A stretch of 63,682 bases of DNA, taken from Octopus bimaculoides (lineage: Eukaryota). The translations under genes and the position numbers were made by a program. Every line of letters begins with the position of its first letter. Position 1 is the first letter of the stretch. The stretch is from assembly GCF_001194135.2 (NCBI RefSeq), contig NC_068988.1, positions 91,508,543-91,572,224 of the forward strand. The letters are read 5' to 3'. Below are positions 2,802 through 63,159 of the stretch, piece by piece. Under the pieces are notes generated by a model that was not told the origin of the DNA, searched no databases, and saw only the letters and a program-made list of their open reading frames with translations.

Positions 2802-2912
2802 AACCCAAAGTGTTCGGTGGCACAGAAAGCAATTCCTATCAACGATGGCTACAAGAAAGATTCACACCAGAAAGTTAGAGTGGAAAGAAGTCCTTATGAG
2901 CATGTTTTGAAT
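2802..2912 (+). CDS. SYCP2: Exon 1 in window (phase 0/0)
   Basis: ttcatttgcag|AAC...AAT|gtatgt; 111 nt; NPKCSVAQKAIPINDGYKKDSHQKVRVERSPYEHVLN. Confidence 0.7.
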
Positions 2913-5370: not shown

Positions 5371-5408
<38 letters not shown>

Positions 5409-8400
5409 GAAATTCAAATAATATCAGTAATATATTGGGGTTGATTCAGCTCCATAATCACTCCTTTAAAAAAAAATCTGTTGCTTTGTGTTATTATAAG
5501 AGATCATTATATATCAAGCAGAGTGGTTTTCAAATTGTGTCACCTTCAAGAATTTGTAATTTATTTGGAAATATTTTGTCAAAGTGTAATTTTCCAATAT
5601 TTACAGAACTGAAGGAAAAAGGTAAGAAAATAACTGCTACCATGCCAAGCAACAGTCCTGATTCAAATAGTCCTAAAACAGAACTGACCAATACTAAAAG
5701 TGGACAGAGATTATCTGCTAAAAAACCTGCTCTAAATCAACCATTGAAAACATATGAAAAAGTTTCATCTACTAGAAGATCCAGTAGGATTAACATTAAA
5801 CACCAGGATCTTCCTTCACCACAAAAAAAAGCTACTCCTCCAAAATCTCCAAGAAAACTTCGTTCAAGAACTAGAAATAACAAGATGACAATGAGCCAAG
5901 AGTCCAGTTCAGATTTTGTTACAAGTTCAACTGCAAAAGTTGCTGGAAGAGAAAAGGAGAACATGCTTAAAAACACATCATCTTTAAAACCATATGAAAG
6001 ATCATCTCGAATAAAACAAAATGTTGGGTCAACTCCTGTTTTAGATATTTCAAATAATTCCTGCAAGAAAACAGAACAAGCTAAAAAGATTCCTGATACA
6101 AGAGACAACTCTGCTTTGACATCAGTGGAAAATACAAAAACCAACCTTGACCAGTCTCACTTTCCAGTATCTCAGTGTGGAGACAACAAATGTAAGCTTA
6201 CCATAACAAATATTTTTTTTTTTCCATCTTGTATTGCCAATGGTTGTAAATTAAATTTGAAATATATTAAAATTCTTTTTTAAATTCTCAATTGCAGAAT
6301 AATGCTAATAATATAGCCTGAACAGGATAAACTACCCCTACACTTTTCTCTGCAAAATAGGGGTAGTTTATCCTGTTCAGGCTATATTATTAGCATTATT
6401 CTGCGATTGAGAATTTAAAATCACTTCTTTAACTTTCTAAAAGACATCTCAATGCTTCTAAAAAAGCAAACTTCATTTGTTTATTTACGTTTGTCGTAAT
6501 TTGAATTTAACATTAAAATTCTTATATTTAACTACTTATTTTGCATTCATTATATCCTCATTGATTTTACGTCTCTAGCCCAAACAACTACAGTTAAAAA
6601 CACATCTAATAAGACAAGGTTGAGATCATTTGACAAGTTAAACCTGCTGCCAGAAAAGTATCCACTTCGCAAAGACAATCACAGTAAGATATACACAAGA
6701 TTTCCAGTATAACCTCCACTTCATGTGCTTTCCCTTTGTTTGTGCACATAAACGTGTGTGTGTGTGTGTGCACATATTTGTATCTGTGTGTATATGTATG
6801 TACTTACGGATACACAGAAAGATAGATGTGTATACAACATTTTAAAGTAGGCTAACTGTATAGTCATGTGTTGTAAATGGCAATTAAAAGGTTTAATGTA
6901 AGGAATGGTATCTAGAATCTCCTGTTGAAGATGATATATGACCTACACAAGTGGTTTGTTTATAGTGATCAAATATATGTACTGTACATTAGCTCACTCC
7001 CTCCATCGATGTTGCCTGAACAGGCGCACAGGAACCACACATCAGGCATCAAAGTGATTGCAAAGCGACATGGAATGTAGTGTTTTGCTCAAGAACACAA
7101 TGCACCACTCGACCCAGAAATTGAAACCATGATCTCGAAATTGTGAGTGAAACACCCAAACCACTAGGCTATGTACCCCCAAAACATATTGTGTGTGTGT
7201 GTGTAACAAGTAGAGAATGGGGAGAATAGAGTTAGTGTCGTTTTTATTCTTCAGATTACAGCTGTTTCAACGACATATGAGTGACAAATTCTATAATAAT
7301 AAGTTGCCAAACATGGAAGAGAGCAATGATTATGTCATATCGAGGTAATGAACATAATCATGTGATTTAAATGAATATAATTACCTGTTGATACTGATTA
7401 AAGTTGTGTGTATCATTTCGTTTTCTCTTTATTTCACATCCGAGCTTTGCTCAAGGGAAACTACTTAGTAATTGTTTCTCCAGTTATCTTAGCTGATAAT
7501 ATATTGGTTAGATCTCTTTTATTTGTTCTCTCTGATTTCTTTACGTGCTTTAATTTTCTCAAGCTGACACAAATGACACATTTAACTCTTAATTTTGATT
7601 TGTTTCTCATGATTTTTTTGGTTTTTTTTAGATAAAAAGAGACCTGAAAACAAAACCACAAGCAATTCAACTGCAACAGAATTGAAGGAATCAAATAGAT
7701 CAATATTGAACAATCCATCTATCTGTACTATCCAGGAAACCCAAGAAAGTGTGTTTTTCATTATTTAACTTGACTATCTCTTTATAATTAATTATACTCA
7801 GTCGTTATCACAATCATTGATTTTTCAAGAATTGATAGTGTAGTTCAGTGTAAGGTGTAAAGAGTATTGTCTTAATTTCTGAGTATTTCTGGTACCCTGT
7901 TGACTAATATTCTTTTCACAATTTAACATTTATTTTTCTGTACCAGAATAGGGAAAATGTTTCGTGTTCATTTTTTACTTTTGTTTCATTTTCACTGGAG
8001 TAATTCTATTTCCTACTGGATACCCTTTTTACTTTTAACCACACAAATATGAAATAGGGGTGGAATATGTTTTTGCTAGTCAAACAACTCCATTTAGCGT
8101 AATCAGAGGTACTCCTATACTACTTCATCAATTTGTACCAATGAAAATGTTATAAACTTGATTTACTCAATGTTGTGCCTTTAATATGATATTTCTGCAT
8201 TGCTAATTAAATACTAGTATGATTTTACACTTTTGTCACATCAACATTACTGACCATCTGAAAGAATATATCTTTTATTTAAGCTTTATACTGATACACA
8301 ATAATATCCTAATACTTATACCATTTTGTGTGAGTGTCATCAGAGAGATACTGAATGATAAAGTGATAGAAGGGATATATATCTCTTCTATCACTGATAT

Positions 8401-8955: not shown

Positions 8956-8991
<36 letters not shown>

Positions 8992-12587: not shown

Positions 12588-12628
<41 letters not shown>

Positions 12629-14694
12629 CAAATTAAAAGGGTAAAGGTTTATCAATTTATTAATTTATTAATAAATCAACAATTAGTAATTTTTACCAAG
12701 CCCTTCGGTATGTAAGCACCATTATCGGTGGAGAACTTATTTAAAAGTTCATATATATTTATAAACATAATTAAGGGATCAGCAAACATTTGCTTCACCA
12801 CATACTGAAGTTCAGAAATAGCAGCTAAAAAAGCTGAGACTCCAACAGATATATATATATATATAATACATGACAGGCTTTTTTCAGTTTCTGTCTACCA
12901 AATCCACTCATAAGGCTTTGGTTAGCATGAGGCTATAGTAGAAAACATTTGACCAAGGTTCCACATGGTGGCACCGAACCCAGAACCATGTGATTGGGAA
13001 GCAAGCTTCTTTATTTCATATGATTTGCCACAAGGGCATTGCACAGAAGAAGCAGTTGCGGGCTAGACTGGTAAAGGAGAAACACTAGCACTCCCCAGGC
13101 TAAAGTAGGTCTTCACCCATATAAGGTGTTGTTTTCTGTTTGGTGGGATATGAAAAGTTTAATCCATTTTGAACTTTTAAACCTAAACCAAATAATAACA
13201 AAGGAGATCTACTGCGAGCAGCTTGAGCAGCTTAAGTCAGTGCTAGAAGGAAAATGACCATCTTTGGTTTCAAGACAAAAGGTGTTCTTCCATATAGTGA
13301 GGATGACATTCCAAAGGCTGGGGCAGTTTGAATAGGAAACGATGCCTCACCCATCATATTTGCCAGACATTGCCCCATCTGATTATCATTTATTCTGCAG
13401 TCTTCAAAATCATTTGGATGGCAAAAATATGAATTCTGTAGACGAGGTCATAACATTACTGGTTGAGTACTTTTTGTCACAGACAAGTGAATTTTGGAAG
13501 TGGAGCCTTGCAAGTCTACCAGATAGATGGAAGTGTATTGTAGAAAATGAAGGAGAGTATATTTTAAATTAAAAAAGAACTTTGTCTTATTTTTTAAAAA
13601 TAAAAGAAGTATAAAAGAAACCACATTATTTATGGGATGACCCAATACATTAAAAAAAAATAGTTATTATTATAATGCTGAATTGTTAGTACACCAGACA
13701 AAATGCTTAGCAGTATTTCGTCTGTCTTCAACATTCTGTGCCCAAATTCCACCAGGGTTGACTTTGCCTTTCATCCTTTCGGGGTCAGTAAAATAAGTAC
13801 CAGCTGACCACTGGGGTTGATGTAATCAACTTCTTCCTTCCCCCAAAATTTTAAGCCTTCTGCCTATAGTAGAAAGGATTATTATTATTATTATTATTAT
13901 CATTATGACAAAGACAGTAAGCTGGCAGAATCATTTGCATGTTAGACAAAATGCCAAGTAGTATTTCTTCTGGCTTTACATTTTGAGTTCAAATGCTGCC
14001 AAAATTAACTTTGCCTTTCATTCTTTTGGGGTGGATAAGTACCAGTAAAACACTGGGGTCAATGTAATCGACTAGTCCCCTCCCCACAAATTTTAGGCCT
14101 TGTGCCTAAAGTGGAAAGGTTTATTATTAATTATTATTATTATTATTACCTCCAGGCAAACACCGGCTTTTGACAGTGGTATCGCCTCAAGTGTTGATAT
14201 TCAAAAGCAGAGAAAAAAAACAGTTTTAGAGGTAGGTATTATAAAGTAAACATTAATAGATTGTTATTTATTAAATATTATTGCTTATTGCGATATTTAT
14301 ATAGTTGAGTGGCAAAGCTTGTAAAACATAGAAAATAAGTCCCTCATAATTATTATGGGACCTTTGATAGTAAAACTTTTCAGTCAACTGTAAATGATAT
14401 AATCTACTCTCTTATCTTCCATTATTCATGGGAATTACTCTTTAACTTTCCCTAAGTGAGAGAATTTACTATATTATTCTCATACCCTCTTGCATTGTGG
14501 GATTAGAGGGACAACACTGAAGACTTATACTTCAAGTAGTAGCCTTGGTGCCTCAGAACTAGCTAGTCTCATGCCACCTTCCAATATTGTGTCCATCCTA
14601 TTCCTAATTCGGTGAATGGAAGCTGGAAACCTGTAATGTGTGTGTGAGTTATCATCATCATCATTCAGTATCCATTTTCCATACTGGCATGGGT

Positions 14695-14726: not shown

Positions 14727-17700
14727 CCAGTTGAGTATTGGAGTCAATATAATCAACTAGTTCCCTCCCACCAAATTTCAGGCCTTGTGCCTAAAGTAGA
14801 AAGAAATTTATTTATTTTGAGTATGAGGAAGAAAGAGAAGTAATGTTCATAAGCATATTTAGACCCCACTAGGAGGAGTTGCTATGGTTAGTATACTTGT
14901 AGCTTCATATAGGGCAGAACGAGAGTAAAACACAATGAATATCAGAGGCGGGGGAGTAGCTGATAATCCAAATGAATTCAAGCAAGAGAGCAGTGGTAAA
15001 GTCAGCATATTCAGAGGAGCATAGGCCATTATCATGAGGGACAAGAGAATGGACCAATAATTGTGTAAAAGTAAGAAGCAATGGATTGGTTTTCATACTA
15101 CTGGAGGATTTTTTGGAGACTTTTCCCTTTCAGTTGTCTACTATGAGGACTGGGATGATGAGTAGTCATTCAGAGCAAGATGTCTGGACTATACTTTAGA
15201 TAAGGCCTATCACCACAAAATAGCCCCTGCTTCAGATCCCACTCCTCTCTAGACACAACTACTCTGCCAAACACATTTGCTGCTATTGAGTACTGACATT
15301 AGGAAAATTATTGTTAGTGGAATAAAACATTTAAGTCGACATTTAAATGATTTATATGAGATATATACTATGAGCATTCTACATATTCAGTGGAAAATCT
15401 GTTAACGATGTTATATTTTATGTAATAATAGCAATTATTTTGAACATAATGGCGGTGCCCCAGCATGGCCACAGCTCATGAGCTGAAACTAGATAAAATG
15501 AAAAATAAAAATGAAAAATAAGCACAAAGCCCTAAATTTGTTGGAAAGGGTCTAATAATGCATATCAACACTAGTACCTTATTTTAACTAACCTTGCAGG
15601 ATGAAAAATAAAGTTAAAAATAAGATTTTAACTCATTATATAGAGACATAACAGCATTTAGGGTGTCATTTTACTGTTTTTTTTTTTTTTTTTTTTTTTT
15701 TTNNNNNNNNNNTTTTTTTTTTTGTTTTTTTTTTTTCATCCATTGTCATTAATAGTGATTTGTAACATAAGCCGAGGGTCAGAAACTGGAAAGAAATATA
15801 TAGTAGTAGCTCATATCAACGTCAATATATTACAGGTATTTATTTTATCAAGCTGGCACGATAAAAAAATAATGGGGAAATAATGGTAATATAAGACTGT
15901 CCTAAATTATTTTGTAATTACATTTAATGATTAGATTTTGATTTACCTGTCATTTCTTCTATTTTCTTTCAGAAAACTGTTATAAAAATAGCTCCTTCTT
16001 CAACAAAGGATGTCAGTATAAGAGAAGATCCTTCATTCATATGTAAGCTTTTTGATTGTTGTTGTTTTCATAACATTGTGTTATAATAATAGCTTAGTTG
16101 TTCAGTTTCCTTATTGCTGTAATTTCAAATTTAATATTTCAATTTTCAATACCTTTAAATGGATGATAAAATATGGTATACACTTCTATATTCAATTATT
16201 GTCACACATACTACATATGCATGCACACACACGTTGGCCAATGTGTCATACATGTTTAACTGCAATGAGTGAGTGTGTCGTGAAATCTTATGAAACTTTG
16301 TTAAATGTCCTGTCCAATTAAATAATACATGGTTTAAATTTTCTGCTGTTTTGTCAACACAGTTTATTTTTTCAGATTTCACAATCTAGAAAATTCCCAA
16401 GAATCATTTACCACTTTACTTTTGTTCTCTAGATCATTCTTTGATACAGAAAAATTCTGAATTGAAGTCCAGTAATATTGATAAAATCAAAGAAATAAAT
16501 AATGATGTTTTGAAAGAAGTAACAAAGGTCACTGAATCTAAACAGACTGCTGTAGAGAATTTATCTACAGCAGATAATAGAATGAAAACTAAGAGGCCAG
16601 TTAAGAAAACGTTTTTCCATTTCATAAGTTCTGATAGTGATGCTAATTCTAACAACAATAAAACCATACCTTCAAAATACTCCACCATCACAGAAGAAAA
16701 TCTCAAGAAATTTAACCAGCAAAGAGACAAGTCATTGGTTAATAATTTAAATGCTAGAATTAAAGGCTTTGTGAAATCTTCATGTGAGACTGTTTTCCAA
16801 GACATTGACAATGTTGACAAGAACCAGACTATGAAAGAAGATGAAATATTGAAGGATCCTCATCATTTTTCCACACTTCACAAATCAAGGAATCTTGATG
16901 TTGATTTAACAAATGACAAAAGTCCTAAAACTACAAGTAATACTTCTGACCATAATAATAATAATAATAATAATGATAATAATGACAATGACCTATCAAA
17001 TAAGTCATCGGCATCTAGTAACTTATCTAGTCCTGTTACTGATCCTACAATGAGGAAAAAATCACCAGAAAATACAAATCAACAACAGAAAGTTGCTAGT
17101 CCAGAGAAAATGGCACAATCAACAGAAGGGGACCAACTAGTGAACCCCAAAACTGCCCATAATAGTTCTAAGTTCCAAACCAATTCGAAACACCAATCAA
17201 AAACAAAACGCAATATTCCAAAAGGATCCCTCTCTTATTTCTCTGCTCAACCACCAAAGGAAGCACATAGAAAATCTGAAGGTAGCCGAAGCCCAAGTTT
17301 TAAACTATTTGAACAGACTCCACCTCATCAAGCACGACACAAGGCAAAAAGAAATTACAGATCAAATAAACAAGCAAATTTATCTAAGCTTTATGACCCT
17401 TACGATTTTGACAATATCAGTAATAGCTCTTCTAATGTTAAACAGTCTATCAGAAGTTTATCTCCAGTCATTTCAGAAAAACGTAAATTTTTCAAGACTA
17501 GGCAGAATACTAAAGCAAGCAATTTTTCAAACTACTTAGATATCACCAAAAGATCAAAACCAATTAAAGAATCTGAAAGTTTTCTGCCATCTACTGCTTC
17601 CAAGAAAACCAAACAATCTTTAAACAAAAAGCATGAAACTTCAAATCAGACATCTAAATCTGTTACTTTAAATCAAACATTAAAATATGTTACTTCAAAT

Positions 17701-49200: not shown

Positions 49201-51422
49201 TGATGCAGTGCAAGAGTGGGTAGGAATTAAATGTATCACTTGAAGGCATAGGAAAAAAATGCTGTCAGGATTTAGAATAAACACGAGTGATAAGAGTGGC
49301 AATATTCTATACAGAAGATCCAGCCAACTTGGGAAAACAGACATTGAAGTGATGATAGTGGTGGTGACTGGTTGTACATGAGAAGGAGATTATTTCTTCC
49401 ATATAGTATAGAAAAGAATGATTATTTTTCAATTAAGCTTTTATATTATGATTATTATGAAAATATATTCATGACAGTTTGTTAAAAGTTAACATAAAAA
49501 CTCAATGCCTATATACTTTTATTGCTATACTTCATAAACACTTATATTTGCCTATGCATACAGTTTTTGCTAAATAAAAATCTGTAGATATATTCTGAGG
49601 AAAGAATTTTGACCCAGGAAGAACATCACAAATTGAACTTTCAAGAAAATTTCTCCAATTATTAAGAAAACTCTTCTGACAAAATTGAGCTTAATGTTTC
49701 TTTGTCTGATCACTTAGACTGAAGCAAAAACAACAATAACTTATATTCTTTTATCTTAAACAGGAAAAGGAATTGACATTTCATGATACTGAATTCACAT
49801 GTAATGGTTCTCTCAACTGTCTTACTGATGAAGAACATCAAGTGTTGACCAGAACAACTACAGAACTGAGCCACAGTGAGAGCATCAACAAATCTCTAGT
49901 GTCTTTTAATATATCAGAGAAATTGCTTCCAACAAACAGTGTTTTGGGAGTTCACCAATTTCAACCTAGTTGTAGCTCATCATTTACAGCTCCTTCAAAA
50001 GCAACTGACAATCTTCAGGGGACTGTTGATATATATCCACGCAGTGATTCTAGCAAATGTGCATCTCTTGTTTCTTGTGTCTCTCTTGCATCTCATTCAT
50101 CTCTCACATCAATCAACAGTAAGAAAAACCAATTTCTCGACTCCCCACTTGAGGAAAGAATTTTGACCCAAGAAGAACATCACAAACTGAACTTTCAAGA
50201 AAATTTCTCAAATTATCAAGAAAACTCTTCCGACAAAAGTGAGCCTAACGTTTCTTTGTCTGATCACTTAGACAATTTTTCAGGGTCTAATCTCTCTATT
50301 ACCAGTTTCCAAAAGAATTCCATGCACCAGCAAGCCCAGATGTCACCAAAACAGACTTCATTTTGGAAGCCATCTTTATGGGTAAATTTTGAAGTCTTTT
50401 TATGAAACCTCATCTGCATTATTTCTGTGCATTGTTGATATCACCTATGTAGTCTTGTTAGAAACACACATGCAAACATTGGAATTAAAACATTGTGTAA
50501 TCTTTTGGATTATTGGGACACCACCAAAGGGTTCATCTTAAGAGTGTATCACAAACAAGTTGAAATGGAGAATCACATCTCTTTTCTAGTTGTTGCTTTT
50601 ATACACACGAAAGTGTTATGATTGTCCTTTTATAGAGATTACAACAGAGTACCTTACCTAACAGCAAGATAGGAATCTCCTCTCTCTCATGGTGCTAATA
50701 TTTTACTTGCACCACATGTATGAATTAATATATTACATCTGTGTTTATATATTTAGAATTATTCATAAAATAAGTTCATGCATCATAAGGAGAGATGAAT
50801 TGTGATACTTCTGGCAGGACTGATAAAACCACACAGATAGGAGCTGATAATAATTCTAATGAATATTAAAAGCTCTAGTTTCTAATGCTATGCTTTGACT
50901 TTAAATTTGATTGTTAACAACTGAATTCCTTCAGAATAAAGCTGAATATTATCATGAATGTATTACTGTCTCATTTAGGACAATTTCACTCAAGACAAGA
51001 GTACAAAGATTAACAACTTTCAAGGTAAATTCTTTTAGTCGTTCTTTTAAAATATTCACTGTTGTGTATGTAGCATCATTACTGTAATGTACAGTAAGAT
51101 TCTCTAATAGGAGAGAGCCTTTTTATTTAGGTACTTACTTTTAAAACTATTAAGTGTCCTGTTTTCTATTAAAAACCAGGTGAGTAGAACTAAGTATACT
51201 GAGACCATTAACGTTACATATCAATCCCAGATATATGACATAATGACTGTTATATAGCCACATGGTTAAGATGATCATATGATTCAGGGTTCAATCCCGG
51301 TGTGCAGACTCTTGAGCGAGTATTTTTTGTCATAGCCTTAAATTTACAAACATTGAGTGAAAGTTGACTGACAGAAATTCTCAGATGTCTCTTTCTCTTC
51401 CTCCCTCCTTCTCCTCTCTGTT

Positions 51423-51460
<38 letters not shown>

Positions 51461-51895: not shown

Positions 51896-51936
<41 letters not shown>

Positions 51937-53590: not shown

Positions 53591-53645
<55 letters not shown>

Positions 53646-54162: not shown

Positions 54163-54216
<54 letters not shown>

Positions 54217-57200
54217 TACACACATGAATACATACTTACATACATATAGTCTTCTTTCATTTTCCATCTACCAAATTTCCTCATAAGGCTTTGGCTGGCT
54301 GAGGGTCATAGCAGAAGACACTTGCCAAAGATGCTGAACCTGAAACCAAGTGGTTGGGAAACATACTGTTTGACTACACAGCCTTGTCTGCACCTATCAA
54401 ACACCTACCAAAATTAGTAGTGCTTGTAATATTTTATAGCAGTAGTTGCTCATATTACTACTACAGTTGTTACTACATTAGAGGTGATGATGATATTGGT
54501 GGTAGTTTAATTCCAACTTCTTAGTTATGGTTCCCATTTAACACTGCATAATTAACATCAAATAAGCGTAAACTTTCCATATCCTACAATAAAAATAATT
54601 TCAAAATTTCTCCCTCTGCAAGAAACCATATACAGGGGTTGGACAAAATAATGGAAACACCTAGCATCTTTGCATTATAATTTTGAAATATCTATAAAAC
54701 CATTGAAAGCTTGTTTATTTTTGTTTTTTGATCTATTGTTAGTGTTGCTTAATATGTTTAGCTAAAATTGCTGTTTCTTTTCAGATATCATCAGAAAAAG
54801 GTAATTAAAATTCATTAAAATGACAGATCTATTGGACTTTCAAAGAGGTCAAATTGTTGGTGCTCGTATGGCAGGTGCTAGCGTAATGCAAACAGCCGAA
54901 ATGTTTGATGTATCAAGAAGTGCTGTCTCGAAAGTAACAATAGCCTTTGAGAAAGAGGGAAAAACCTCCTCATTGAAACAAAACTCCAGAAGAAAACCAA
55001 AACTTTCAGATAGGGACCGTCAGACTCTTACACAAATTGTTAGAAAGGATCACAAAAGTACAGCTCCCAAAATTAAAGCAGAGCTTAATGACCACCTCGA
55101 GAACCCAGTTTCTACAAAAACTGTTCACCAGGAGCTGCACAAAGCCGGATTTCACAGGAGGGCTGCAATCAGAAAACTACTACTTTCAAAAGCAAACGTT
55201 GCAAAGCATTTAGAGTGGAGTAAAATCCTACAGAATTAGTCCCTAGAGCAGTGGAAGAATGTTATATCCTCAGATGAGTCATCCTTTACCTTATTTCTGA
55301 CCACCGGCCGAGTATACGAGTAGAGACAGCCAAAAGAAGCATTTGACCCAGATTGCCTTCTTCCAACTGTTAAACATGGAGGAGGATCTGTGATGATTTG
55401 GGGGGGCTATATCTTAGAAATCTGCTGGCCCACTGTTTTGGTTTTCCTTCATGGCAGAATTAATAGTCAAAATTATTTAAGCATTTTTCTGATCAAATTC
55501 ATCCAATGGCTGCGGAACTGTTTCTGGAGGGAAGCACAGTCTTTCAGGGTGATAATGCACCAATTCACACAGCTAAAGTTGTTACTGAATGACACAAGGA
55601 GCATTCTAGTGAAGTTGAACATCTTATTATCTGGCCACCACAGTCCCCAGATCTCAATATTATTGAACATTTATGGTGCAATTTAGAAAAACAAGTAAGG
55701 AGTCAATATCCTTTACCATCATCACTACAAGAATTGGAGACTGTTTTAGCTGAAGAATGGACAAAAATTCCTTTGAAAACAATTCAAACTTTGTATGAAT
55801 CCATGCCTTGTAGAATTCAAACTGTAATTACTGCCAAAAGTAGTCCTACCCCATATTAAGATAAATTTGTTTGAAATTTTGAGGTGTTTCCATTATTTTG
55901 TGCAACCCCTGTAATCTTCAAATCCTATTTTATTTTGTTCTTAGCCTTGCCAACAAAGACATATAAGAAATCAGTGACCGTGTCAGTCAGTGATGAATCT
56001 GTAGAAGTTCTTACTGCAAAAGTGTCAGAGAGGAGTAGTCATCAATATTCCTGTACCAGAGAATCAGCCTACTTACCAACTGAGAGTAAAAGTTCCGACA
56101 ATTGTAGCAATTACAAATCTGGTAACATCAAACAACTTGTCCATTCTATTGGAACTGATATGAAAAAATCTATTGCAGTAAGTCACATTCAATGAATTAA
56201 GATGTTGTTCCATAGTTGTATTTAACATTCCAAAATTCTTTTTGCATTTCATTTTCTTTTATATTGACTGATTTGTTGAAGGTGAATGACTACTTTACTT
56301 AATCCACTTTAAATCTACTTTAATAGTTGTTTTTCATGCAACAGGCACTCCTATGTATCTTTCCCATTCACTCTTTTATCACACAACTCAGTGTTCATTC
56401 ACAAAGCTCCTACACTTTCTCTTGTCATACTAACATCTTGATTAAACAGTTGTTCTACACTGCCTTGATGATGTATAGAAATGTGTCCCAAAGCTATCAC
56501 CATACTACAAAAGATCAGTTTTACCGGCACTAAATTCTGATATTGTCTCCTCTGCCTTTCTTTACCAGAATTAATCATTATGATAATGGGTTTTTTTCTC
56601 ATCAGTTAAGGTGAAATTTAATTAAATAGTATTTTTATTTTTAAATAATACTAAATATGTTTTTAAATTGTATCGAATATTAGCAACCACTTTACTATCA
56701 TTCTCTTAACAGGCATAGTACCCTATCTTCTTCATATATATAAATGAATACACATACATACATACATATACATACATAAGATTTGACATAGGAGCATCTG
56801 GTTGTCCAATCAACTGGACAACTTGCTCATTGAATTAACATGTAACGTTGCTGAGTATTCCACTGACATATATCCTTAATGTAATTCACAAGGAGAACCA
56901 GCATGATGCATTGTGACAAGGCTAGATATTTGAATAACAAGTACAGTCCATCTGATAGGCTTCTATACAGTTTCTTGTAGCAGCTAACTATAATACTACT
57001 ATACCAGTCATTGGGGATGGTGCCTTCCTGAATAACCTGATTAACTATATGGGTGACTAAAACTGTATCTTACACCACCAGAAATTTTAATCATTTTGGC
57101 AGTGATTCCTGATGGCCCAGGGGCTTTCCACGTCTTCATGTCCTTAATTACCTTATCTATTATGCTGCTATCAACTCTGAAGGCTAGACCCTCAATTGGT

Positions 57201-60200: not shown

Positions 60201-63159
60201 TTTCATTGGTTTGATTACATGATGAGATCTTTTTACTCATGTATATATATCATCGCAAACACGAATTTGTCCATGGTCACTTTGTAACTTCTGACAAAAT
60301 AACTTCTAAAATACAAAATTTTGTCAAAAACGTTAAGAGTAAACCCTGTTCTATGTAACACATTCTAACAATATCGGAAGTTTGAAAGTGTTTAGTTAAA
60401 AAAAATTAATTAAATAATCTGAACACCAAAGTCGACCTCGGTGAAATTTGAAATCAAAACATAAAGACAGATGAAATACCACTAAGCATTTCACCCAGTG
60501 CGCTAATGTTTCTGCCAACTNNNNNNNNNNCCTTGAGGTTGCAGATATTTTGATGTAACTTTTTTTCTACTGAACCAAATCTTAAACTATTTATGCCAAA
60601 GTGTAGCTGACGGGTTGTCCTCTTTAAAACTATTAACAGTTTGCAATTTAGTTGAGAACTGAATTAGTGGTGAATCTGGGAAGCTGCTGCGATTGATGAA
60701 ATGGTGGACTTAAGAATATATTCAACCGTGGTTGAATGATACATCCACATTTTAATCATTAAATTTATCGCATATGCATTTTGCAATGGGATTGGTAATC
60801 TGGCTGAAATTAAAATGAAATGAAAGTACATATGGCCTTGGCAACTAGATATTAAAAGAAATGGGGGAACCCTAGATTCATTGACTTAGTCACATTTGAA
60901 TAACAACAACAATCACTTAGTTGTTGATTCAAGAAAGAGCAGTAAAGAAATGGAATACTATTTGGGAATGTATTTTAAATAATTGAAAATAAATCCTACA
61001 AACACTACTGATTATTATGAAATATCTCAGAAGTCTTTACAAAATAAGATGGTTATTGCTATAAATTCTTACACACACACACACTCTCTCTCTCTCTCTC
61101 TCTCTCTAAATGCACCAAATATACATGAAATGATGACTGAAAATAGATTAACTACACATGCATACACATATGTATTTACCTTGGACATGAAACTGTTTTT
61201 AGCAGTGAGTAGCATACTTATGAAGTGAGTAGATTGTTATAATTCTCAAAAAATTTCCTGCTTCAACATTTTCCTTTGCTAAATATCCTTTGTTTTATGT
61301 CTCTTTGTTTTATGTCTCTTTGTTTTCACACCATGATGGCCCCGTTATTTACATTTGCCACTTTTAGATAAAACAGACTAATATATCTGCAATCACTAAA
61401 GAAACTCTAGCTAAAACAGAGAAGGCCCTTTTGAAAGTATGGCAAAAAGATTTTCACAGCCGGTAAACTACATTTTATATTAATTTTTTACTATCTTGTA
61501 CATATTAAGTGCAGTTATTAAATTTAACAAAAACATTCTAAAGCTGGTAAGCTTGGTTTTATTTCCATTTTTCTTTCTTCTGTATAGAAAGTGTGATTAT
61601 TAGATTTGTTTCTATTTTAAAATTTAAATGTAAACACAGTAATTTTAGCAACATTCACCCTGTGACTTGCTATCAAATCTTGGTGCAAGAGTTTGTTCTT
61701 GTATTTCATTAACTTTGAAAGAAGAAATAGAATTTTTTTTCAATTTCTGTTCACGATTTAAACTATTTACACATGCCACACTCTCTCCCTCTCTCTCTCT
61801 CTCTCTCATGATCAACTAATCATGTAATGTGTCAGGACAATCTCCTTTATTTTTCTTTGTATGAGGAGAATTGTTGTTGTTGTTGTTGGCACTCCGTCGC
61901 TTACGATGTCGAGGGTTCCAGTTGATCCGATCAACGGAACAGCCTGCTCGTGAAATTAACGTGCAAGTGGCTGAGCACTCCACAGACACGTGTACCCTTA
62001 ACGTAGTTCTCAGGGATATTCAGCGTGACACAGTGTGACAAGGCTGACCCTTTGAATTACAGGCACAACAGAAACAGGAAGTAAGAGTGAGAGAAAGTTG
62101 TGGTGGAAGAGTACAGCAGGGTTCGCCACCATCCCCCTGCCGGAGCCTCGTGGAGCTTTAGGTGTTTTCGCTCAATAAACACTCACAATNNNNNNNNNNN
62201 NNNNNNNNNNNNNNNNNNNNNNNNNNNNNNNNNNNNNNNNNNNNNNNNNNNNNNNNNNNNNNNNNNNNNNNNNNNNNNNNNNNNNNNNNNNNNNNNNNNN
62301 NNNNNNNNNNNNNNNNNNNNNNNNNNNNNNNNNNNNNNNNNNNNNNNNNNNNNNNNNNNNNNNNNNNNNNNNNNNNNNNNNNNNNNNNNNNNNNNNNNNN
62401 NNNNNNNNNNNNNNNNNNNNNNNNNNNNNNNNNNNNNNNNNNNNNNNNNNNNNNNNNNNNNNNNNNNNNNNNNNNNNNNNNNNNNNNNNNNNNNNNNNNN
62501 NNNNNNNNNNNNNNNNNNNNNNNNNNNNNNNNNNNNNNNNNNNNNNNNNNNNNNNNNNNNNNNNNNNNNNNNNNNNNNNNNNNNNNNNNNNNNNNNNNNN
62601 NNTCTCTCTCTCTCTCTCCTCTTCACACTTGCACACACATATTGAGTATAGAGGATGTGTGAAGGTTAGAGAGAAATGAAGCATGCTCTGCTTGAGCTGT
62701 AATGTTAGTATACAAGAGCAACATAGTACATATCAGGTAAGAAAATAACTGTGTGTAAGATGAATCAGATATATTGTGCAAGAGGGATGATTGCATTGGA
62801 ATGGACAGATAATGTGTTTGAATGATGACAGAGGAGTAGAAAAGCACCAAGAGATTCAAGTAGAATAAAATTGTGAAAGAGGAAAACCGAGGAAAAAGTT
62901 GTAATATCACATATGGAAATCAAATGTTGTCTTTGCTGTAAACTGTACAACTGTATTAAATGATTTATGTATGTTATAATAATAATAATTTTGTCTTCTT
63001 CATTTAACTTTACATTGTTTCTGAAGATTATTTTACTTTTCCTTCCCTAATTATTTTAGACATGACCTGCACAAAGATTTTGAGAGTAAAGTATTCAGAG
63101 AATTTGAGAGACTTCACAGAGAAATACTCTCTTCTGAAGAATGCAGACAAACACTTATG
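2802..63159 (+). CDS. SYCP2: Multi-exon gene (21 exons in window, partial at both ends): SYCP2-like synaptonemal complex/meiotic axis protein with C-terminal Cor1 (SYCP3-type) coiled coil
   Basis: 21 AG/GT-bounded exons with matching intron phases give 4530 nt of stop-free frame. The last three exons encode KQLVHSIGTDMKKSIAIKQTNISAITKETLAKTEKALLKVWQKDFHSRHDLHKDFESKVFREFERLHREILSSEECRQTLM, which aligns gap-free to human SYCP3 [73 protein letters not shown] (recalled). More than 1400 aa of disordered sequence before the coil fits SYCP2 rather than the ~240 aa SYCP3. The N-terminal ARM/PH domain would lie upstream of the window. Confidence 0.72.
3359..3626 (+). CDS. SYCP2: Exon 2 (phase 0/1)
   Basis: aatttcag|GAA...CAAG|gtaaat; 268 nt; ESFNSSTMKTMRKC...SERNNQ. 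Confidence 0.85.
4233..4712 (-). mobile_element. Short interspersed repeat family A (RTE-type 3' tail with (GAT)n) with a 115-bp internal tandem duplication
   Basis: (CAT)n-CGTTTAACGTCCGCTTTCCATGC, also seen at 39575, 42146, 52750, 53340 and 53404; 4401-4515 repeated at 4516-4630. Confidence 0.85.
5374..5408. repeat. (CT)n microsatellite
   Basis: Direct reading. Confidence 0.95.
5607..6191 (+). CDS. SYCP2: Exon 3 (phase 1/1)
   Basis: atatttacag|AA...AAAT|gtaagc; 585 nt; core of ORF 5435..6283; K/S/P-rich with a PSPQKKATPPKSPRK cluster. Confidence 0.9.
6278..6420. mobile_element. 143-bp palindromic MITE-like foldback
   Basis: 63-bp arms (6278-6340, 6358-6420) with one mismatch and a 17-nt loop; TTAA at both termini. 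Confidence 0.85.
6579..6683 (+). CDS. SYCP2: Exon 4 (phase 1/1)
   Basis: gtctctag|CC...CACA|gtaaga; 105 nt; SQTTTVKNTSNKTRLRSFDKLNLLPEKYPLRKDNH. Confidence 0.8.
7000..7177 (-). mobile_element. Degenerate tRNA-derived SINE head
   Basis: Reverse complement reads TAGCCTAGTGGTTTGG (A-box-like) ... GGTTTCAATTTC (B-box-like) ... TTCTTGAGCAAAACACT. Confidence 0.6.
7632..7748 (+). CDS. SYCP2: Exon 5 (phase 1/1)
   Basis: gtttttttag-type acceptor|AT...GAAA|gtgtgt; 117 nt; NKKRPENKTTSNSTATELKESNRSILNNPSICTIQETQE; donor is weak. Confidence 0.7.
11336..11432 (+). CDS. SYCP2: Exon 6 (phase 1/2); in-frame alternative acceptors at 11294 and 11303
   Basis: cattttccag|AC...TAA|gtaagt; CAYEENSIVIPESVPLKQQPLVSRKLANSNT. 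Confidence 0.8.
12870..13010 (-). mobile_element. tRNA-derived SINE family E head
   Basis: Reverse complement AAGAAGCTTGCTTCCCAATCACATGGTTCTGGGTTCGGTGCC...TGAGTGGATTTGGTAGACAGAAACTGAAA; related copies at 18950, 37613, 51200 and 54250. Confidence 0.8.
13016..13647 (+). mobile_element. Mariner transposon 3' half, internally deleted and degenerate
   Basis: HPSYLPDIAPSDYHLFCSLQNHLDGK; WKWSLASLPDRWKCIVENEGEYI; ends ...TTATGGGATGACCCAA followed by TA. Confidence 0.85.
13674..14148 (+). mobile_element. Two tandem tRNA-derived SINEs, family B, with (ATT)n tails
   Basis: GCTGGCAGAA...AAATGCTTAGC...GAGTTCAAAT...GCCTTTCATCCTTTCGGGGTC...AAGTACCAG...ACTGGGGT...GCCTATAGTAGAAAGG(ATT)n. Confidence 0.88.
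14156..14231 (+). CDS. SYCP2: Exon 7 (phase 2/0)
   Basis: attacctccag|G...GAG|gtaggt; 76 nt; KQTPAFDSGIASSVDIQKQRKKTVLE. Confidence 0.8.
15973..16042 (+). CDS. SYCP2: Exon 8 (phase 0/1)
   Basis: ttttctttcag|AAA...ATAT|gtaagc; 70 nt; KTVIKIAPSSTKDVSIREDPSFI. Confidence 0.82.
16433..17868 (+). CDS. SYCP2: Exon 9, 1436 nt (phase 1/0)
   Basis: ttgttctctag|AT...AAG|gtaagg; core of the 497-aa ORF 16441..17934; disordered S/K/N/T-rich; contains poly-Asn, YDPYDFD and a 9-aa triple repeat. Confidence 0.93.
18690..19065 (-). mobile_element. SINE family E, near full length (tRNA head, internal microsatellite, 3' segment C)
   Basis: GACACTTGCCCAAGGTGC...CCATGTGGTTAC head; GCTGGGGCACTACCTT tail matches 15450-15500 and 46600-46650. 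Confidence 0.7.
19095..19476 (-). mobile_element. tRNA-derived SINE family D, full length, young
   Basis: Reverse complement GGCGCAATGGCCCAGTGGTTAGG (A box) ... GGTTTCGATTCCC (B box); (CAA)n tail; highly similar to 38895 and 61871 copies. Confidence 0.92.
20032..20099 (+). CDS. SYCP2: Exon 10 (phase 0/2)
   Basis: cataaag|ACA...TAG|gtaagt; 68 nt; TAANNARLTRKRKPVNYKEADT. Confidence 0.82.
20445..20615 (+). mobile_element. Degenerate SINE family B
   Basis: CAGCAGAATC...CTTTCATCTTCTTGGAGTCAATAAAATAAGTAC...CACTGGG. Confidence 0.7.
20620..21260 (-). mobile_element. Old CR1/L2-like LINE RT C-terminal fragment
   Basis: Fragmentary minus-strand similarity by eye (H+..+SK.A.K.LG.+ pattern) with many stops; similar decayed pieces at ~24280-24760, ~48970-49340 and ~62620-62930. 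Confidence 0.4.
22146..22173 (+). CDS. SYCP2: Exon 11, 28-nt micro-exon (phase 2/0)
   Basis: ttcataaag|C...GAG|gtaagt; SSEDQINDDE. Confidence 0.75.
22845..23650 (-). mobile_element. Tc1/mariner-superfamily transposase remnant (maT/DD37D-like context)
   Basis: YREVLDKVVKPWVERVCNGRLYVFQQ..SHK...Q...ANLHDHILPD; N-terminal HTH-like piece near 23500-23620. Confidence 0.65.
24817..25345. repeat. About 530-bp almost pure A/T low-complexity tract (TA/TAT/TATAT mosaic)
   Basis: Direct reading; only a few G bases; a similar tract at 51430-51930 includes a gap. Confidence 0.95.
25481..25663 (+). CDS. SYCP2: Exon 12 (phase 0/0)
   Basis: tatgttctag|TCT...CAA|gtaagt; 183 nt; SVVSSRSEASMPQKILK...SKQLNQ. 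Confidence 0.82.
25694..26190 (+). mobile_element. Two tandem SINE family B copies separated by (ATT)/(AGT)n
   Basis: AAGGCAGCGAGCTGGCAGAA...GAGTTCAAAT...AAGTACCA; (AGT)n at 25925-25974. Confidence 0.88.
26200..28050 (-). mobile_element. R4/Dong/Rex6-type non-LTR retrotransposon (RT plus RLE), 5'-truncated and degenerate
   Basis: KRGIFQGD, LNHLLFMDDLKLF, WDWLKKGILKKET..ILAAQDQAL, C-terminal VP++VG.LG and LLQK..LLG.ARI+RKVLD. Confidence 0.85.
28085..28500 (-). mobile_element. Second R4/Dong-type element, 3' RLE endonuclease fragment
   Basis: DHEIKNRKPDIVLVEKENKLCWIIDIACPAD...KEERKVERY (PD-D/ExK fold), VPIIVGAV; flanked by (TTA)/(TCA)n on both sides. Confidence 0.85.
28968..29190 (+). mobile_element. 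SINE family B
   Basis: GGCAAGCTGGCAGAATC...GAGTTCAAATTCCGCC...GCCTATAGTAGAAAGG(TTA)n. Confidence 0.85.
29860..30080 (+). mobile_element. SINE family B
   Basis: GAGCTAGCAGAATTG...GCCTTTCATCCTTTCAGGGTC...GCCTATAGTAGAAAGGATTATT. Confidence 0.85.
30570..31065 (+). mobile_element. Gypsy/Ty3 LTR retrotransposon integrase remnant
   Basis: FHTGHPGISK, IDFAGP, DSFTKWPE, FARYGVLGTIVFDNGTQFMANEFKNFCKMY; broken by stops and a 35-bp triplication. Confidence 0.8.
31440..31695 (+). mobile_element. RTE LINE 3' end fragment with family-A-like tail
   Basis: RL.W.GY+RNMEND.CIKKC-like frame followed by ACCCATGCAAGCTTGGAAAA...GATGATGAT. Confidence 0.55.
32684..32967. mobile_element. About 285-bp foldback (MITE-like)
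   Basis: Arms 32684-32818 and 32838-32967 are reverse complements with scattered transitions; 19-nt loop; explains paired ORFs 32682(+) and 32781(-). Confidence 0.85.
33797..33831 (+). CDS. SYCP2: Exon 13, 35-nt micro-exon (phase 0/2)
   Basis: tctgtatttgcag|ACA...AG|gtagag; TNKRDNQEQKK; weak donor; frame-neutral only together with exon 14. Confidence 0.5.
35348..35936. mobile_element. Non-autonomous DNA element with nested inverted repeats and an internal TTAGGG hairpin
   Basis: TTTTAAAACGGGGGCCACATTTTTCATTAA (~35361) is the reverse complement of the sequence at ~35893; a second inner IR near 35500-35548 and 35734-35785; telomeric-type hairpin 35594-35639. Confidence 0.7.
36057..36084 (+). 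CDS. SYCP2: Exon 14, 28-nt micro-exon (phase 2/0)
   Basis: ttaatttcag|C...AAG|gtaatt; SNTNTNKIQK. Confidence 0.55.
37613..38015 (+). mobile_element. SINE with family E tRNA head and RTE-type (family A-like) tail
   Basis: GGCATGGCTGATGGTTAAGAAGCTTGCTTCC head; CCAACCCACGTGAGCATAGAAAAGTGGTTGTTAAAATG...GATAATGATG tail. Confidence 0.65.
38669..38718 (+). CDS. SYCP2: Exon 15 (phase 0/2)
   Basis: ttccatttcag|ATA...CA|gtaagt; 50 nt; ISVPSLSGSHFGSSIT. Confidence 0.78.
38895..39208 (+). mobile_element. SINE family D (runs into gap)
   Basis: GGAGGCGCAATGGCCCAGTGGTTAGG...GGTTTCGATTCCC; body matches the 19095 copy. Confidence 0.92.
39575..39680 (+). mobile_element. Family A tail fragment
   Basis: CAGTCAAATCGTCCAACCCATGCTAGCATGGAAAGTGGATGTTAAACGATGATGATG. 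Confidence 0.85.
41608..42145 (+). other. Unassigned ~180-codon open frame, possibly ORF1/5' region of an L1/Tx1-type LINE
   Basis: ORF 41629..42207, GC-richer than its flanks; phase 0 does not fit between host exons 15 and 16 (phase 2); truncated by a family A repeat; Tx1 ORF2 lies ~0.85 kb downstream on the same strand. Confidence 0.35.
42146..42225 (-). mobile_element. Family A tail fragment (next to gap)
   Basis: (CAT)n CGTTTAACATCCGCTTTCCATGCTAGCATGGGTTGGACG. Confidence 0.85.
42990..45735 (+). mobile_element. Tx1/L1-clade LINE ORF2 (RT and C-terminal region), 5'-truncated and degenerate
   Basis: SSGLDGLPYELY, AIPSRSIRNNLYL, LDQSKTFDRADYHYL, SAYADNIT, C..C...ETILHAIIQC zinc-knuckle-like; 3' end AATAAGATAAATC(ATT)n. 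Confidence 0.85.
46420..46655 (+). mobile_element. SINE family E 3' segment (C)
   Basis: GTTTACGTCCCCGTAACTTAGCGGTTCGGCAAAAGAGACCGATAGAATAAGTAC...GCTCCAGCATGGCTGCAGTCAAATGACTGAAACAAG. Confidence 0.75.
46726..46906 (+). CDS. SYCP2: Exon 16 (phase 2/0); donor at 46907 or 46913
   Basis: aattttcag|A AAC AGT GAG ATC AGT TGG...; QNSEISWIAAKKNNHQENQIQKTYSTKKDK...KLKNYK; both candidate donors (gtttta, gttagt) are phase 0. Confidence 0.82.
48729..48960 (+). mobile_element. Young SINE, family B head with alternative 3' tail, 10-bp TSD
   Basis: TSD AGAAACTGAG at 48719-48728 and 48961-48970; CpG-rich; tail GTAGCCCCTTGTGGGCAGTAAAGAAATA instead of (ATT)n. Confidence 0.9.
49596..49719 (+). pseudogene. Intronic duplicate of a 124-bp piece of exon 17 (50150-50273)
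   Basis: 8 mismatches in 124 nt, no indel; CAA changed to TAA. Confidence 0.92.
49764..50381 (+). CDS. SYCP2: Exon 17, 618 nt (phase 0/0)
   Basis: cttaaacag|GAA...TGG|gtaaat; core of ORF 49773..50405; Ser-rich. Confidence 0.88.
50979..51024 (+). CDS. SYCP2: Exon 18 (phase 0/1)
   Basis: ctcatttag|GAC...CAAG|gtaaat; 46 nt; DNFTQDKSTKINNFQ. Confidence 0.78.
52370..52797 (+). mobile_element. RTE LINE 3' end running into the family A tail
   Basis: PRKSWDKVLKDDLRTLNIAEEMTKD followed by GGAAGGACATCCAGCC...CCAACCCATGCCAGCATGGAAAACAGATGTTAAA...(GAT)n. Confidence 0.75.
53226..53583. mobile_element. Tail-to-tail pair of family A repeats forming an inverted repeat
   Basis: 53226-53379 (+) and 53404-53583 (-); about 9 differences over ~150 nt. 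Confidence 0.92.
54250..54395 (-). mobile_element. SINE family E head
   Basis: CTACCAAATTTCCTCATAAGGCTTTGG...GACACTTGCC...CCAAGTGGTTGGGAA. Confidence 0.7.
54633..55911 (+). mobile_element. Full-length Tc1-family transposon (1279 bp) with an inactivated transposase
   Basis: 30-bp TIRs CAGGGGTTG(G/C)ACAAAATAATGGAAACACCT; TA TSD at 54631-32 and 55912-13; HTH MTDLLDFQRGQIVGAR; catalytic SDES, DNAP and SPDLNIIE; internal stops and frameshifts. Confidence 0.95.
55945..56177 (+). CDS. SYCP2: Exon 19 (phase 1/0); start of Cor1-type coil
   Basis: ttgttcttag|CC...GCA|gtaagt; 233 nt; ends KQLVHSIGTDMKKSIA. Confidence 0.88.
57035..58620 (-). mobile_element. RTE-clade LINE 5' part (APE endonuclease and linker), degenerate
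   Basis: GVGILLAEKW, ISAYAPQSG, AGDFNG, LLEFCDANDLMICNTNFKK, DYLLTR, RPRVTWWW, W..HYERLLNVENEW, KAPGPSGI. Confidence 0.9.
59030..59526. mobile_element. About 500-bp foldback with ~150-bp arms containing internal subrepeats
   Basis: 59030-59184 is the reverse complement of 59377-59526; each arm has two CTGGAAAAGTACAG(A/G)ACAAG units. Confidence 0.85.
60425..60520 (-). mobile_element. SINE family B head (next to gap)
   Basis: AAAGTCGACCTCGGTGAAATTTGAA...CTAAGCATTTC...TTCTGCCA. Confidence 0.75.
61368..61462 (+). CDS. SYCP2: Exon 20 (phase 0/2); Cor1-type coil
   Basis: ccacttttag|ATA...CG|gtaaac; 95 nt; IKQTNISAITKETLAKTEKALLKVWQKDFHS. Confidence 0.88.
61871..62189 (-). mobile_element. SINE family D (head lost in gap)
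   Basis: (TTG)n GCACTCCGTCGCTTACG...; matches the 19095 copy. Confidence 0.92.
63060..63159 (+). CDS. SYCP2: Exon 21 (phase 2/0); Cor1-type coil; gene continues beyond window
   Basis: ttattttag|A...ATG|gtatgt; 100 nt; RHDLHKDFESKVFREFERLHREILSSEECRQTLM. Confidence 0.88.

What the first reader, a model, noticed from the sequence alone, without database searches (positions are those of the whole stretch)
2802..63159. Very long SYCP2-like meiotic axis protein spread over 21 exons and invisible in the ORF track
The exon chain is phase-consistent and stop-free for about 1510 aa, yet the N-terminal folded domains are not in the window. The full protein would therefore exceed human SYCP2 (~1530 aa, recalled), with an expanded disordered linker. 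Invertebrate SYCP2 orthologues are poorly annotated because only the ends are conserved.
Basis: partly seen in the sequence, partly recalled or inferred. Interest (0 to 1): 0.7.

Follow-up and report, generated by a model that had tools for sequence, protein, structure and literature searches.

The report
Octopus SYCP2 meiotic axis gene
The window holds 21 real, spliced exons (1510 codons) from the middle and part of the tail of an octopus version of SYCP2, a scaffold protein of meiotic chromosomes; a sister species already has this gene annotated, so it is ordinary.

Summary
Spliced RNA contigs from four public runs, length accounting along those contigs, canonical AG/GT sites and an orthologue alignment together give 21 + strand exons between 2802 and 63159. 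They total 4530 nt, or 1510 codons, with no stop. Every assembly gap inside the finding lies in an intron, and the mRNA contigs bridge all of them.

The 1510 window-encoded residues have no Pfam hit of their own. They align colinearly, at 83.6% identity, with residues 380-1899 of Octopus sinensis XP_036361276.1, named 'synaptonemal complex protein 2-like' (1984 aa). The N-terminus of that protein matches the mouse SYCP2 structure 5IWZ (E 1.9e-26) and Pfam SYCP2_SLD. Its C-terminus matches human SYCP3 structure 4CPC (E 5.1e-10).

Both ends of the gene lie outside the window: about 379 aa at the N-terminus and about 85 aa at the C-terminus. The window holds only the first half of the SYCP3-like coiled coil, so exons 20-21 alone give no Cor1 hit.

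This is the expected orthologue of a gene already annotated in a sister species. Interest is low.

The parts
2802..2912 (+). Exon 1 of the window (aa 1-37). It lies directly after the SLD domain of the orthologue, is a conserved island and is a candidate HORMAD closure-motif region.
   Evidence: RNA contig pieces in four runs. Identity is 89% to O. sinensis and 65% to Argonauta. Its position corresponds to the mouse closure motif at residues 395-414 (PMC6349405).
3359..3626 (+). Exon 2 (aa 38-126).
   Evidence: RNA contig pieces 3359-3624. The junction is shifted by 2 nt to the canonical GT.
5607..6191 (+). Exon 3 (aa 127-321), a basic S/K/P-rich linker.
   Evidence: RNA contig pieces.
6579..6683 (+). 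Exon 4 (aa 322-356), a conserved island.
   Evidence: RNA contig pieces. Identity is 97% to O. sinensis and 60% to Argonauta.
7632..7748 (+). Exon 5 (aa 357-395).
   Evidence: RNA contig pieces.
11336..11432 (+). Exon 6 (aa 396-427), inferred.
   Evidence: The contig needs exactly 97 nt here. This is the only candidate with a good acceptor and a gtaagt donor. tblastn to O. sinensis gives 81% identity.
14156..14231 (+). Exon 7 (aa 428-453).
   Evidence: RNA contig pieces.
15973..16042 (+). Exon 8 (aa 454-476).
   Evidence: RNA contig pieces. Gap 15703-12 lies in the preceding intron.
16433..17868 (+). Exon 9, the 1436-nt giant exon (aa 477-955). It is a disordered linker with a conserved island at aa 542-617.
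   Evidence: RNA contig pieces and conservation analysis.
20032..20099 (+). Exon 10 (aa 956-977), containing a basic RKRKPVNYKE patch.
   Evidence: Contig piece and the joint 20099>22146, GT..AG.
22146..22173 (+). Exon 11, a 28-nt microexon.
   Evidence: Joint with a 28-nt side.
25481..25663 (+). Exon 12 (aa 988-1048), an S/K/Q-rich unit, inferred.
   Evidence: Contig accounting leaves exactly 183 nt. tblastn to O. sinensis gives 87% identity. The unit occurs four times in Argonauta and is absent from one O. vulgaris model.
33797..33831 (+). Exon 13, a 35-nt microexon.
   Evidence: Joint 33831>36057, GT..AG, in four runs.
36057..36084 (+). Exon 14, a 28-nt microexon.
   Evidence: Joints on both sides in four runs.
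38669..38718 (+). Exon 15 (50 nt).
   Evidence: The contig piece ends at contig position 1305, and exon 16 starts at position 1306.
46726..46906 (+). Exon 16 (aa 1086-1146), a conserved island.
   Evidence: RNA contig pieces in four runs.
49764..50381 (+). Exon 17 (aa 1147-1352).
   Evidence: Clean contig pieces, with zero depth in the flanking sequence.
50979..51024 (+). Exon 18, a 46-nt microexon.
   Evidence: Joint 50381>50979, GT..AG, in four runs.
55945..56177 (+). Exon 19 (aa 1368-1445). Its last residues begin the SYCP3-like helical region.
   Evidence: The loose end after 51024 equals the first 30 nt of this exon. The 233-nt length fits the contig accounting. tblastn gives 83% identity.
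61368..61462 (+). Exon 20 (aa 1446-1476), in the Cor1/SYCP3-like coiled coil. It is the exon most conserved against Argonauta (68% identity).
   Evidence: Contig pieces and joint. Conservation analysis. Pairwise alignment to the SYCP3 core.
63060..63159 (+). Exon 21 (aa 1477-1510), which continues the coiled coil. It ends at a splice donor, not at a stop codon.
   Evidence: Joint 61461>63059, GT..AG, in four runs. The contig continues at least 1168 nt beyond 63159, with nothing laid up to 63500.

Best explanation
The locus is the central and distal part of the octopod orthologue of SYCP2, the large 'axis core' protein of the meiotic chromosome axis, also called the lateral element of the synaptonemal complex.

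What is shown:
- A spliced, transcribed, 21-exon, 1510-codon open frame lies on the + strand.
- It is colinear and about 84% identical with the O. sinensis protein annotated as SYCP2-like.
- That orthologue has the SYCP2 ARLD/SLD N-terminal fold and an SYCP3-like C-terminal helical domain.
- The window encodes everything from about 8 residues after the orthologue's SLD match (residues 255-372; the window aligns from residue 380) to the middle of the C-terminal coiled coil.
- The encoded sequence is a basic, S/K/N/T-rich, low-complexity linker with a handful of conserved islands.

What is inferred from the mammalian protein (PMC6349405, PMC13396342):
- The N-terminal domain, which lies outside the window, would anchor the protein on chromatin or cohesin axes.
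- A short closure motif just after that domain would capture the HORMA domain of a meiotic HORMAD by the safety-belt mechanism. Exon 1 is the positional candidate.
- The C-terminal helix, which begins in exons 19-21 and finishes outside the window, would pair antiparallel with SYCP3 into 2:2 tetramers. These would join end to end into axis filaments.
- The long linker would act as a flexible, probably phosphorylated spacer.
For: Transcript structure: with the assembled chain.

Orthology:
- The HMMER search of 1.84 billion representatives gave only three hits. These were O. vulgaris (85% identity), Argonauta hians (50% identity) and a short Logan ORF.
- The end-to-end alignment to residues 380-1899 of O. 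sinensis is.

Family identity of the orthologues:
- Pfam SYCP2_SLD at E 5.7e-15, above its cut-off.
- PDB 5IWZ, mouse SYCP2, at E 1.9e-26 over query residues 70-332.
- PDB 4CPC, human SYCP3, at E 5.1e-10 over the whole C-terminal 161 aa.

Evidence from the window alone:
- The last 84 aa align colinearly with the start of the SYCP3 core at E 6e-6.
- The conserved islands fall where function is expected, at aa 1-41 after the SLD and at aa 1422-1482 at the start of the coiled coil.
- Composition is 38% S/T/N/Q and 16.8% K+R against 10.5% D+E.
- The exon 9 sequence is held almost completely by some RNA runs of the species and little or not at all by others. This fits tissue-restricted expression.
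Against: - The window-encoded 1510 aa have no Pfam hit at all and no PDB hit for the post-SLD region. Family identity therefore rests on transitivity through orthologues.
- This gene's own N- and C-termini were not seen, because they lie outside the window.
- Pfam Cor1 stays below its gathering score even in the full-length orthologues (25.6-27.6 bits against 32.1).
- The tissues of the RNA runs are coded, so gonad or meiotic expression is not shown.
Confidence: 0.9

Rival explanations
1. This is an N-terminally extended SYCP3 (Cor1 family) paralogue rather than SYCP2.
For: The only recognisable similarity inside the window is to the SYCP3 core. The orthologue C-terminus hits SYCP3 in the PDB and hits Pfam Cor1 weakly.
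Against: The colinear orthologues carry the SYCP2-specific ARLD/SLD N-terminus. The RNA contigs of this gene extend at least 911 nt upstream of exon 1, enough to cover most of such a domain. West et al. report limited sequence homology between the SYCP2 and SYCP3 coiled-coil regions (PMC6349405).
Confidence: 0.03
2. This is a transcribed but non-functional or mis-assembled locus. On this reading the open frame would be an artefact of scaffold gaps, or the gene would be a decaying pseudogene.
For: Nine assembly gaps lie in the window, and several abut repeats. The protein evolves fast, with only 43% identity to Argonauta.
Against: All gaps are intronic, and mRNA contigs from four independent runs cross every intron without extra or missing sequence. 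There are 1510 codons without a stop and all 20 introns are canonical. Islands are conserved across octopod genera.
Confidence: 0.02
3. This is a true SYCP2 homologue whose main role has shifted away from the meiotic axis. A precedent is the repurposing of SYCP2-like proteins as kinetochore components in kinetoplastids (bioRxiv 10.1101/2021.02.06.430040, listed; only its title and abstract were seen).
For: The linker is about 50% longer than in mouse, and tissue identity of the expression is unknown.
Against: Both terminal modules that define axis function are retained in the orthologues. Nothing in the sequence points to another role.
Confidence: 0.05

Closest known systems
Octopus sinensis XP_036361276.1 'synaptonemal complex protein 2-like' (1984 aa); Octopus vulgaris CAI9726573-75; Argonauta hians GAB1600084.1
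   Same: The window protein aligns colinearly to residues 380-1899 at 83.6% identity, and every window exon is represented, including exon 12. The conserved islands are also shared with Argonauta.
   Different: The species differs, at about 16% amino-acid divergence. One O. vulgaris model lacks the exon 12 unit, and Argonauta has four tandem copies of it.
Mammalian SYCP2 (mouse 1500 aa; N-terminal structure PDB 5IWZ)
   Same: The domain order is the same: an ARLD/SLD N-terminus, then a short conserved segment where the closure motif lies, then a long disordered linker, then a C-terminal coiled coil of about 170 aa (PMC6349405).
   Different: No detectable sequence similarity exists across the linker. 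The linker is about 1400 aa, against about 900 aa in mouse. The candidate closure motif has no sequence match in the PDB, the only place searched. The total length is about 1980 aa.
SYCP3 / Pfam Cor1 (PF04803; PDB 4CPC, 6DD8)
   Same: The C-terminal 160 aa of the octopus protein align over the whole SYCP3 tetramer core at E 5.1e-10. Window exons 19-21 cover the first half.
   Different: SYCP3 is a short protein, with its coiled-coil core at residues 84-248 in mouse (PMC6349405), whereas this domain follows at least 1445 aa of other sequence here. The Pfam score is below the gathering threshold.
Red1 (budding yeast) and ASY3 (plants), the axis core proteins
   Same: According to PMC6349405 they share the architecture: a closure motif that recruits meiotic HORMADs and a C-terminal coiled-coil tetramer that forms filaments. 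In Red1 the closure motif directly follows the ordered N-terminal domain, as in SYCP2.
   Different: No sequence comparison was tried here. The relation is architectural only.

Membership tests
SYCP2 | An N-terminal armadillo-repeat-like domain plus an Spt16M-like domain (ARLD/SLD, as in PDB 5IWZ; Pfam PF18584). | not testable with these tools
   This gene's own N-terminus lies outside the window: tblastn finds nothing for orthologue residues 1-379. The mRNA contigs do run at least 911 nt upstream of exon 1. In the colinear orthologues the feature is met, with 5IWZ at E 1.9e-26 and SYCP2_SLD at 56 bits against a cut-off of 26.5.
SYCP2 | A HORMAD closure motif directly after the N-terminal domain. 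| tested here: inconclusive
   Exons 1-2 encode a conserved island at exactly that position. Window aa 1-41 are 67% identical to Argonauta, and the motifs NPKCSVAxKxIPxN and RKCSVP are invariant. There is no sequence match to any PDB chain. Binding was not tested.
SYCP2 | A long, intrinsically disordered central linker. | tested here: met
   About 1400 aa with no Pfam domain. Composition is 38% S/T/N/Q, 21% hydrophobic and net basic. Conservation is low outside short islands. Disorder is inferred from composition and was not predicted with a dedicated tool.
SYCP2 | A C-terminal coiled coil of about 170 aa, homologous to and pairing with SYCP3. | tested here: met
   Homology is met. The orthologue C-terminus matches SYCP3 structure 4CPC at E 5.1e-10 over its full length. 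The window-only 84 aa match the start of the SYCP3 core at E 6e-6. Only about half of the domain is in the window. Pairing with SYCP3 is not testable here.
SYCP2 | Meiosis-specific (gonadal) expression and localisation to the axis. | not testable with these tools
   Run tissues are coded. Exon 9 words are at least 0.79 complete in seven RNA runs, 0.13-0.30 in seven others, and 0.00 in two further runs of the same species. This is compatible with restricted expression and shows nothing more.
Cor1/Xlr/Xmr (Pfam PF04803), i.e. SYCP3 proper | A score at or above the Pfam gathering threshold (32.1 bits). | tested here: not met
   The window protein has no hit. The full-length orthologues score 25.6-27.6 bits over profile positions 1-132.
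Cor1/Xlr/Xmr (Pfam PF04803), i.e. SYCP3 proper | A short protein consisting essentially of the coiled-coil core. | tested here: not met
   The helical region is preceded by at least 1445 window-encoded residues in the same spliced frame.

The most novel reading that the evidence does not exclude
Octopod SYCP2 keeps a C-terminal helix that is recognisably SYCP3-like at the plain sequence level (E 5e-10 to human SYCP3). It also keeps a sharply conserved 40-residue island in exon 1, exactly where the mammalian HORMAD2 closure motif lies. If exon 1 is a working closure motif with a sequence unlike the vertebrate one, cephalopods would give an independent invertebrate test of the 'closure motif plus SYCP2:SYCP3 tetramer' axis model, and direct sequence evidence that the SYCP2 and SYCP3 helices are paralogous. 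A second possible point is that the linker grows by duplication of a whole-exon unit. The exon 12 unit is present once here, four times in Argonauta, and is absent from one O. vulgaris model.
Probability: 0.4. Interest if true: 0.35.

Novelty: already known. Interest (0 to 1): 0.2.

Why it matters
This is mainly a matter of annotation quality. A roughly 1980-aa meiotic scaffold gene spread over more than 60 kb, with five exons of 28-50 nt, is easy to miss or truncate in a gapped short-read assembly. The exon table given here is a verified model for this stretch.

Biologically it confirms that octopods keep the canonical SYCP2 axis-core architecture. It also offers a compact set of conserved islands as candidates for HORMAD binding, nuclear import and filament assembly. 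No new kind of system is involved.

Tried and rejected
- Pfam on the six largest ORF-like exons gave nothing meaningful.
- The search for homologous proteins with exon 9 returned no hit at all. With the last 158 aa it returned only a 109-aa Logan ORF. Yet 85%-identical NCBI proteins do exist, because the exhaustive HMMER search found them. The word-indexed search was therefore uninformative for this gene and says nothing about annotation in the window's own species.
- The 199-aa ORF at 41608-42204 looked like a linker exon. No piece of the mRNA contigs is laid on it, it is not needed for the length accounting, and it has no Pfam hit. I rejected it as an exon.
- A dynamic-programming exon-chain search on splice scores and composition timed out once and then gave noisy microexon solutions. 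Single-exon scans for 209 nt and 113 nt found nothing convincing. The orthologue sequence and the RNA joints resolved exons 10-15 instead.
- A two-exon solution for the 896-nt block failed. A 46-nt microexon was needed and was later confirmed.
One call met a busy server.
- The Rfam and tRNA scans of the window found nothing.
- A PDB search with the post-SLD segment for a closure-motif complex gave no hit.
- One search used a chimeric query made of window residues plus the O. sinensis tail. I repeated it with the native orthologue sequence and with window-only sequence, so that no conclusion rests on the chimera.

Full report
**The window.** It is 63,682 nt of AT-rich (35% GC), strongly CpG-depleted (observed/expected 0.29) animal DNA with nine runs of N. 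The mechanical ORF list shows several long, low-complexity, S/K/N-rich open stretches on the + strand. It also shows transposon-like ORFs on both strands.

**Is the exon chain real?**
Public RNA-derived contig sets of the same species hold the 1.4-kb open stretch at 16.4-17.9 kb almost completely. I laid the contigs of runs X10, X12, X20 and X25 on seven stretches of the window, and the same few long contigs appeared each time as perfectly matching, spliced pieces.
- A contig of 2374, 2878 or 2888 nt, depending on the run, covers 2802-2912, 3359-3624, 5605-6191, 6579-6683 and 7632-7748. It then has an unlaid 97 nt, followed by 14156-14229, 15971-16042 and 16433 onward.
- A 3746-nt contig of X10, with counterparts of about 1.8 kb in the other runs, starts at 16956 and leaves the big exon at 17868.
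- That contig then passes through 20032-20099 and 22146-22173, joined GT..AG.
- It continues through 33797-33831, 36057-36084 and 38669-38718, joined GT..AG in all four runs.
- It continues through 46726-46906 and through 49764-50381 and 50979-51024.
- After 51024 it reads on into the first 30 nt of the stretch at 55945.
- It ends in the window with 61368-61462 and 63060-63159.

These lengths are met by 11336-11432, 25481-25663 and 55945-56177. Each has a good acceptor and donor, and each matches the O. sinensis protein at 81-87% identity.

The result is 21 exons, 4530 nt and 1510 codons, with no stop and with AG/GT at every intron. Five exons are only 28-50 nt long, which is why the gene is invisible in an ORF track.

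**Gaps.** Every N run inside the finding lies in an intron. The exons on either side are joined in the mRNA contigs, either directly or by exact length accounting. Several gaps begin exactly where an interspersed repeat ends, as expected for scaffold gaps. They therefore do not affect the reading frame.

**Where the gene ends.** Position 2802 is a splice acceptor and 63159 is a splice donor. The contigs carry at least 911 nt upstream of 2802 and at least 1168 nt downstream of 63159, with nothing laid between 63160 and 63500. Both protein ends are therefore outside the window.

**What it is.**
The 1510 residues have no Pfam hit, whether searched as fragments or as a whole. The word-indexed protein search was blind to the protein. 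An exhaustive HMMER search of 1.84 billion representatives with the last 424 residues returned just three proteins.
- P0001 is 1920 aa, 85% identical, and aligns at 1407-1835.
- P0002 is 1695 aa and 50% identical.
- P0003 is a 109-aa ORF.

Their sources name P0001 as Octopus vulgaris CAI9726574.1. A member of its cluster is Octopus sinensis XP_036361276.1, 'synaptonemal complex protein 2-like', 1984 aa. P0002 is an Argonauta hians hypothetical protein. The whole window protein aligns in one piece to O. sinensis residues 380-1899 at 83.6% identity. tblastn finds no trace of residues 1-379 or 1900-1984 in the window.

The orthologues carry the family's hallmarks.
- Pfam SYCP2_SLD scores 56 bits, well above its cut-off, at residues 255-372.
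- The first 400 residues match the crystal structure of the mouse SYCP2 N-terminal domain, 5IWZ, at E 1.9e-26.
- The last 169 residues match the human SYCP3 tetramer core, 4CPC, over their whole length at E 5.1e-10.
- Pfam Cor1 covers profile positions 1-132 but scores only 25.6-27.6 bits, below its threshold of 32.1.

The window holds only the first 69 or so positions of this helical domain. A direct pairwise comparison of the window's last 84 residues with the SYCP3 core is still colinear from its first residue, at E 6e-6.

**How it most likely works.**
This part is inference from the mammalian protein. West et al. (PMC6349405) showed three things for mouse SYCP2.
- It has an ordered N-terminal domain.
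- It has a HORMAD2-binding closure motif at residues 395-414, directly after that domain.
- It has a C-terminal coiled coil (residues 1325-1500) that forms an antiparallel 2:2 tetramer with SYCP3 and polymerises into filaments.

Deleting the exon that encodes the closure motif removes HORMAD2 from the axes in vivo (PMC13396342).

In the octopus gene, window exon 1 begins about 8 residues after the orthologue's SLD match (residues 255-372; the window aligns from residue 380). Exon 1 and the start of exon 2 form one of the best-conserved islands between Octopus and Argonauta, with invariant NPKCSVAxKxIPxN and RKCSVP. This is the positional candidate for the closure motif. It has no detectable sequence match in the PDB, so the assignment remains a hypothesis.

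The strongest island of all (aa 1422-1482, 80% identical) is the start of the SYCP3-like helix. Other islands lie at aa 311-361, 542-617, 956-996 (with a basic RKRKPVNYKE patch), 1067-1141 and 1161-1225, and have no assigned function. The remainder is a basic, S/K/N/T-rich linker with 23 S/T-P sites. It is about 1400 aa long, against roughly 900 aa in mouse.

**Comparison and novelty.** The locus is the ordinary orthologue of a gene that NCBI already names in a sister species. It belongs to a well-studied family whose architecture it follows. Whether this species' own annotation contains the gene could not be determined with the tools available. I therefore rate it 'already known' and of low interest. 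Two modest points remain open: the unusually clear SYCP3 likeness of the C-terminus, and the conserved post-SLD island.

Noticed in passing
window 41608-42204 (+), in intron 15: A 199-aa stop-free, low-complexity ORF looks like another linker exon. No piece of the mRNA contigs is laid on it and it has no Pfam hit. Its 3' end runs into a repeat copy that abuts gap 42226-42235.
   Followed up: partly
window 49596-49719 (+), in intron 16: A 124-nt, 93.5% identical copy of an internal piece of exon 17 (50150-50273) sits just upstream of that exon. It has stops in frame and zero RNA contig depth. It looks like a recent local duplication.
   Followed up: yes
window 25481-25663 (exon 12) and proteins P0001, P0002 and P0004: The 61-aa exon 12 unit is present once here and in O. 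sinensis. It is absent from the O. vulgaris model P0001. It is present as four tandem copies in Argonauta hians at residues 958-1169. This suggests linker length changes by whole-unit duplication, or alternative splicing.
   Followed up: partly
window 54805-55856 (+), in intron 18: This is a Tc1/mariner-type transposase remnant. HTH_Tnp_Tc3_2 scores E 4.5e-13, and a DDE_3 fragment is split over frames.
   Followed up: partly
window 19093-19400 (+), 61880-62188 (+), 38895-39208 (-); also 4093-4700, 42146-42225, 39599-39678 and 53211-53583: These are interspersed repeat families 92-95% identical to each other, with RNA-contig depths of 10^4-10^5. Three copies stop exactly at assembly gaps 39209, 42226 and 62190. 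A 113-nt unit is tandemly repeated at 4401-4628.
   Followed up: partly
window 30906-31061 (+), in intron 12: A short integrase-core (rve) fragment scores 25.5 bits, below its cut-off. It is probably a decayed LTR-element remnant.
   Followed up: no
window 1189-2549 (+) and 57041-58385 (-): These ORF pieces look by eye like non-LTR retrotransposon endonuclease and reverse-transcriptase fragments. The pieces tested gave no Pfam hit at E 0.01 or better.
   Followed up: partly
window 24750-25454 (+), in intron 11; also 51361-51582: These are long TA-rich microsatellite-like tracts.
   Followed up: no
protein P0003 (Logan contig, 1340 nt): A 109-aa genomic ORF from another run covers exon 19 plus the flanking intron-encoded residues, at 77% identity. 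It is presumably the same exon in a further related cephalopod.
   Followed up: no
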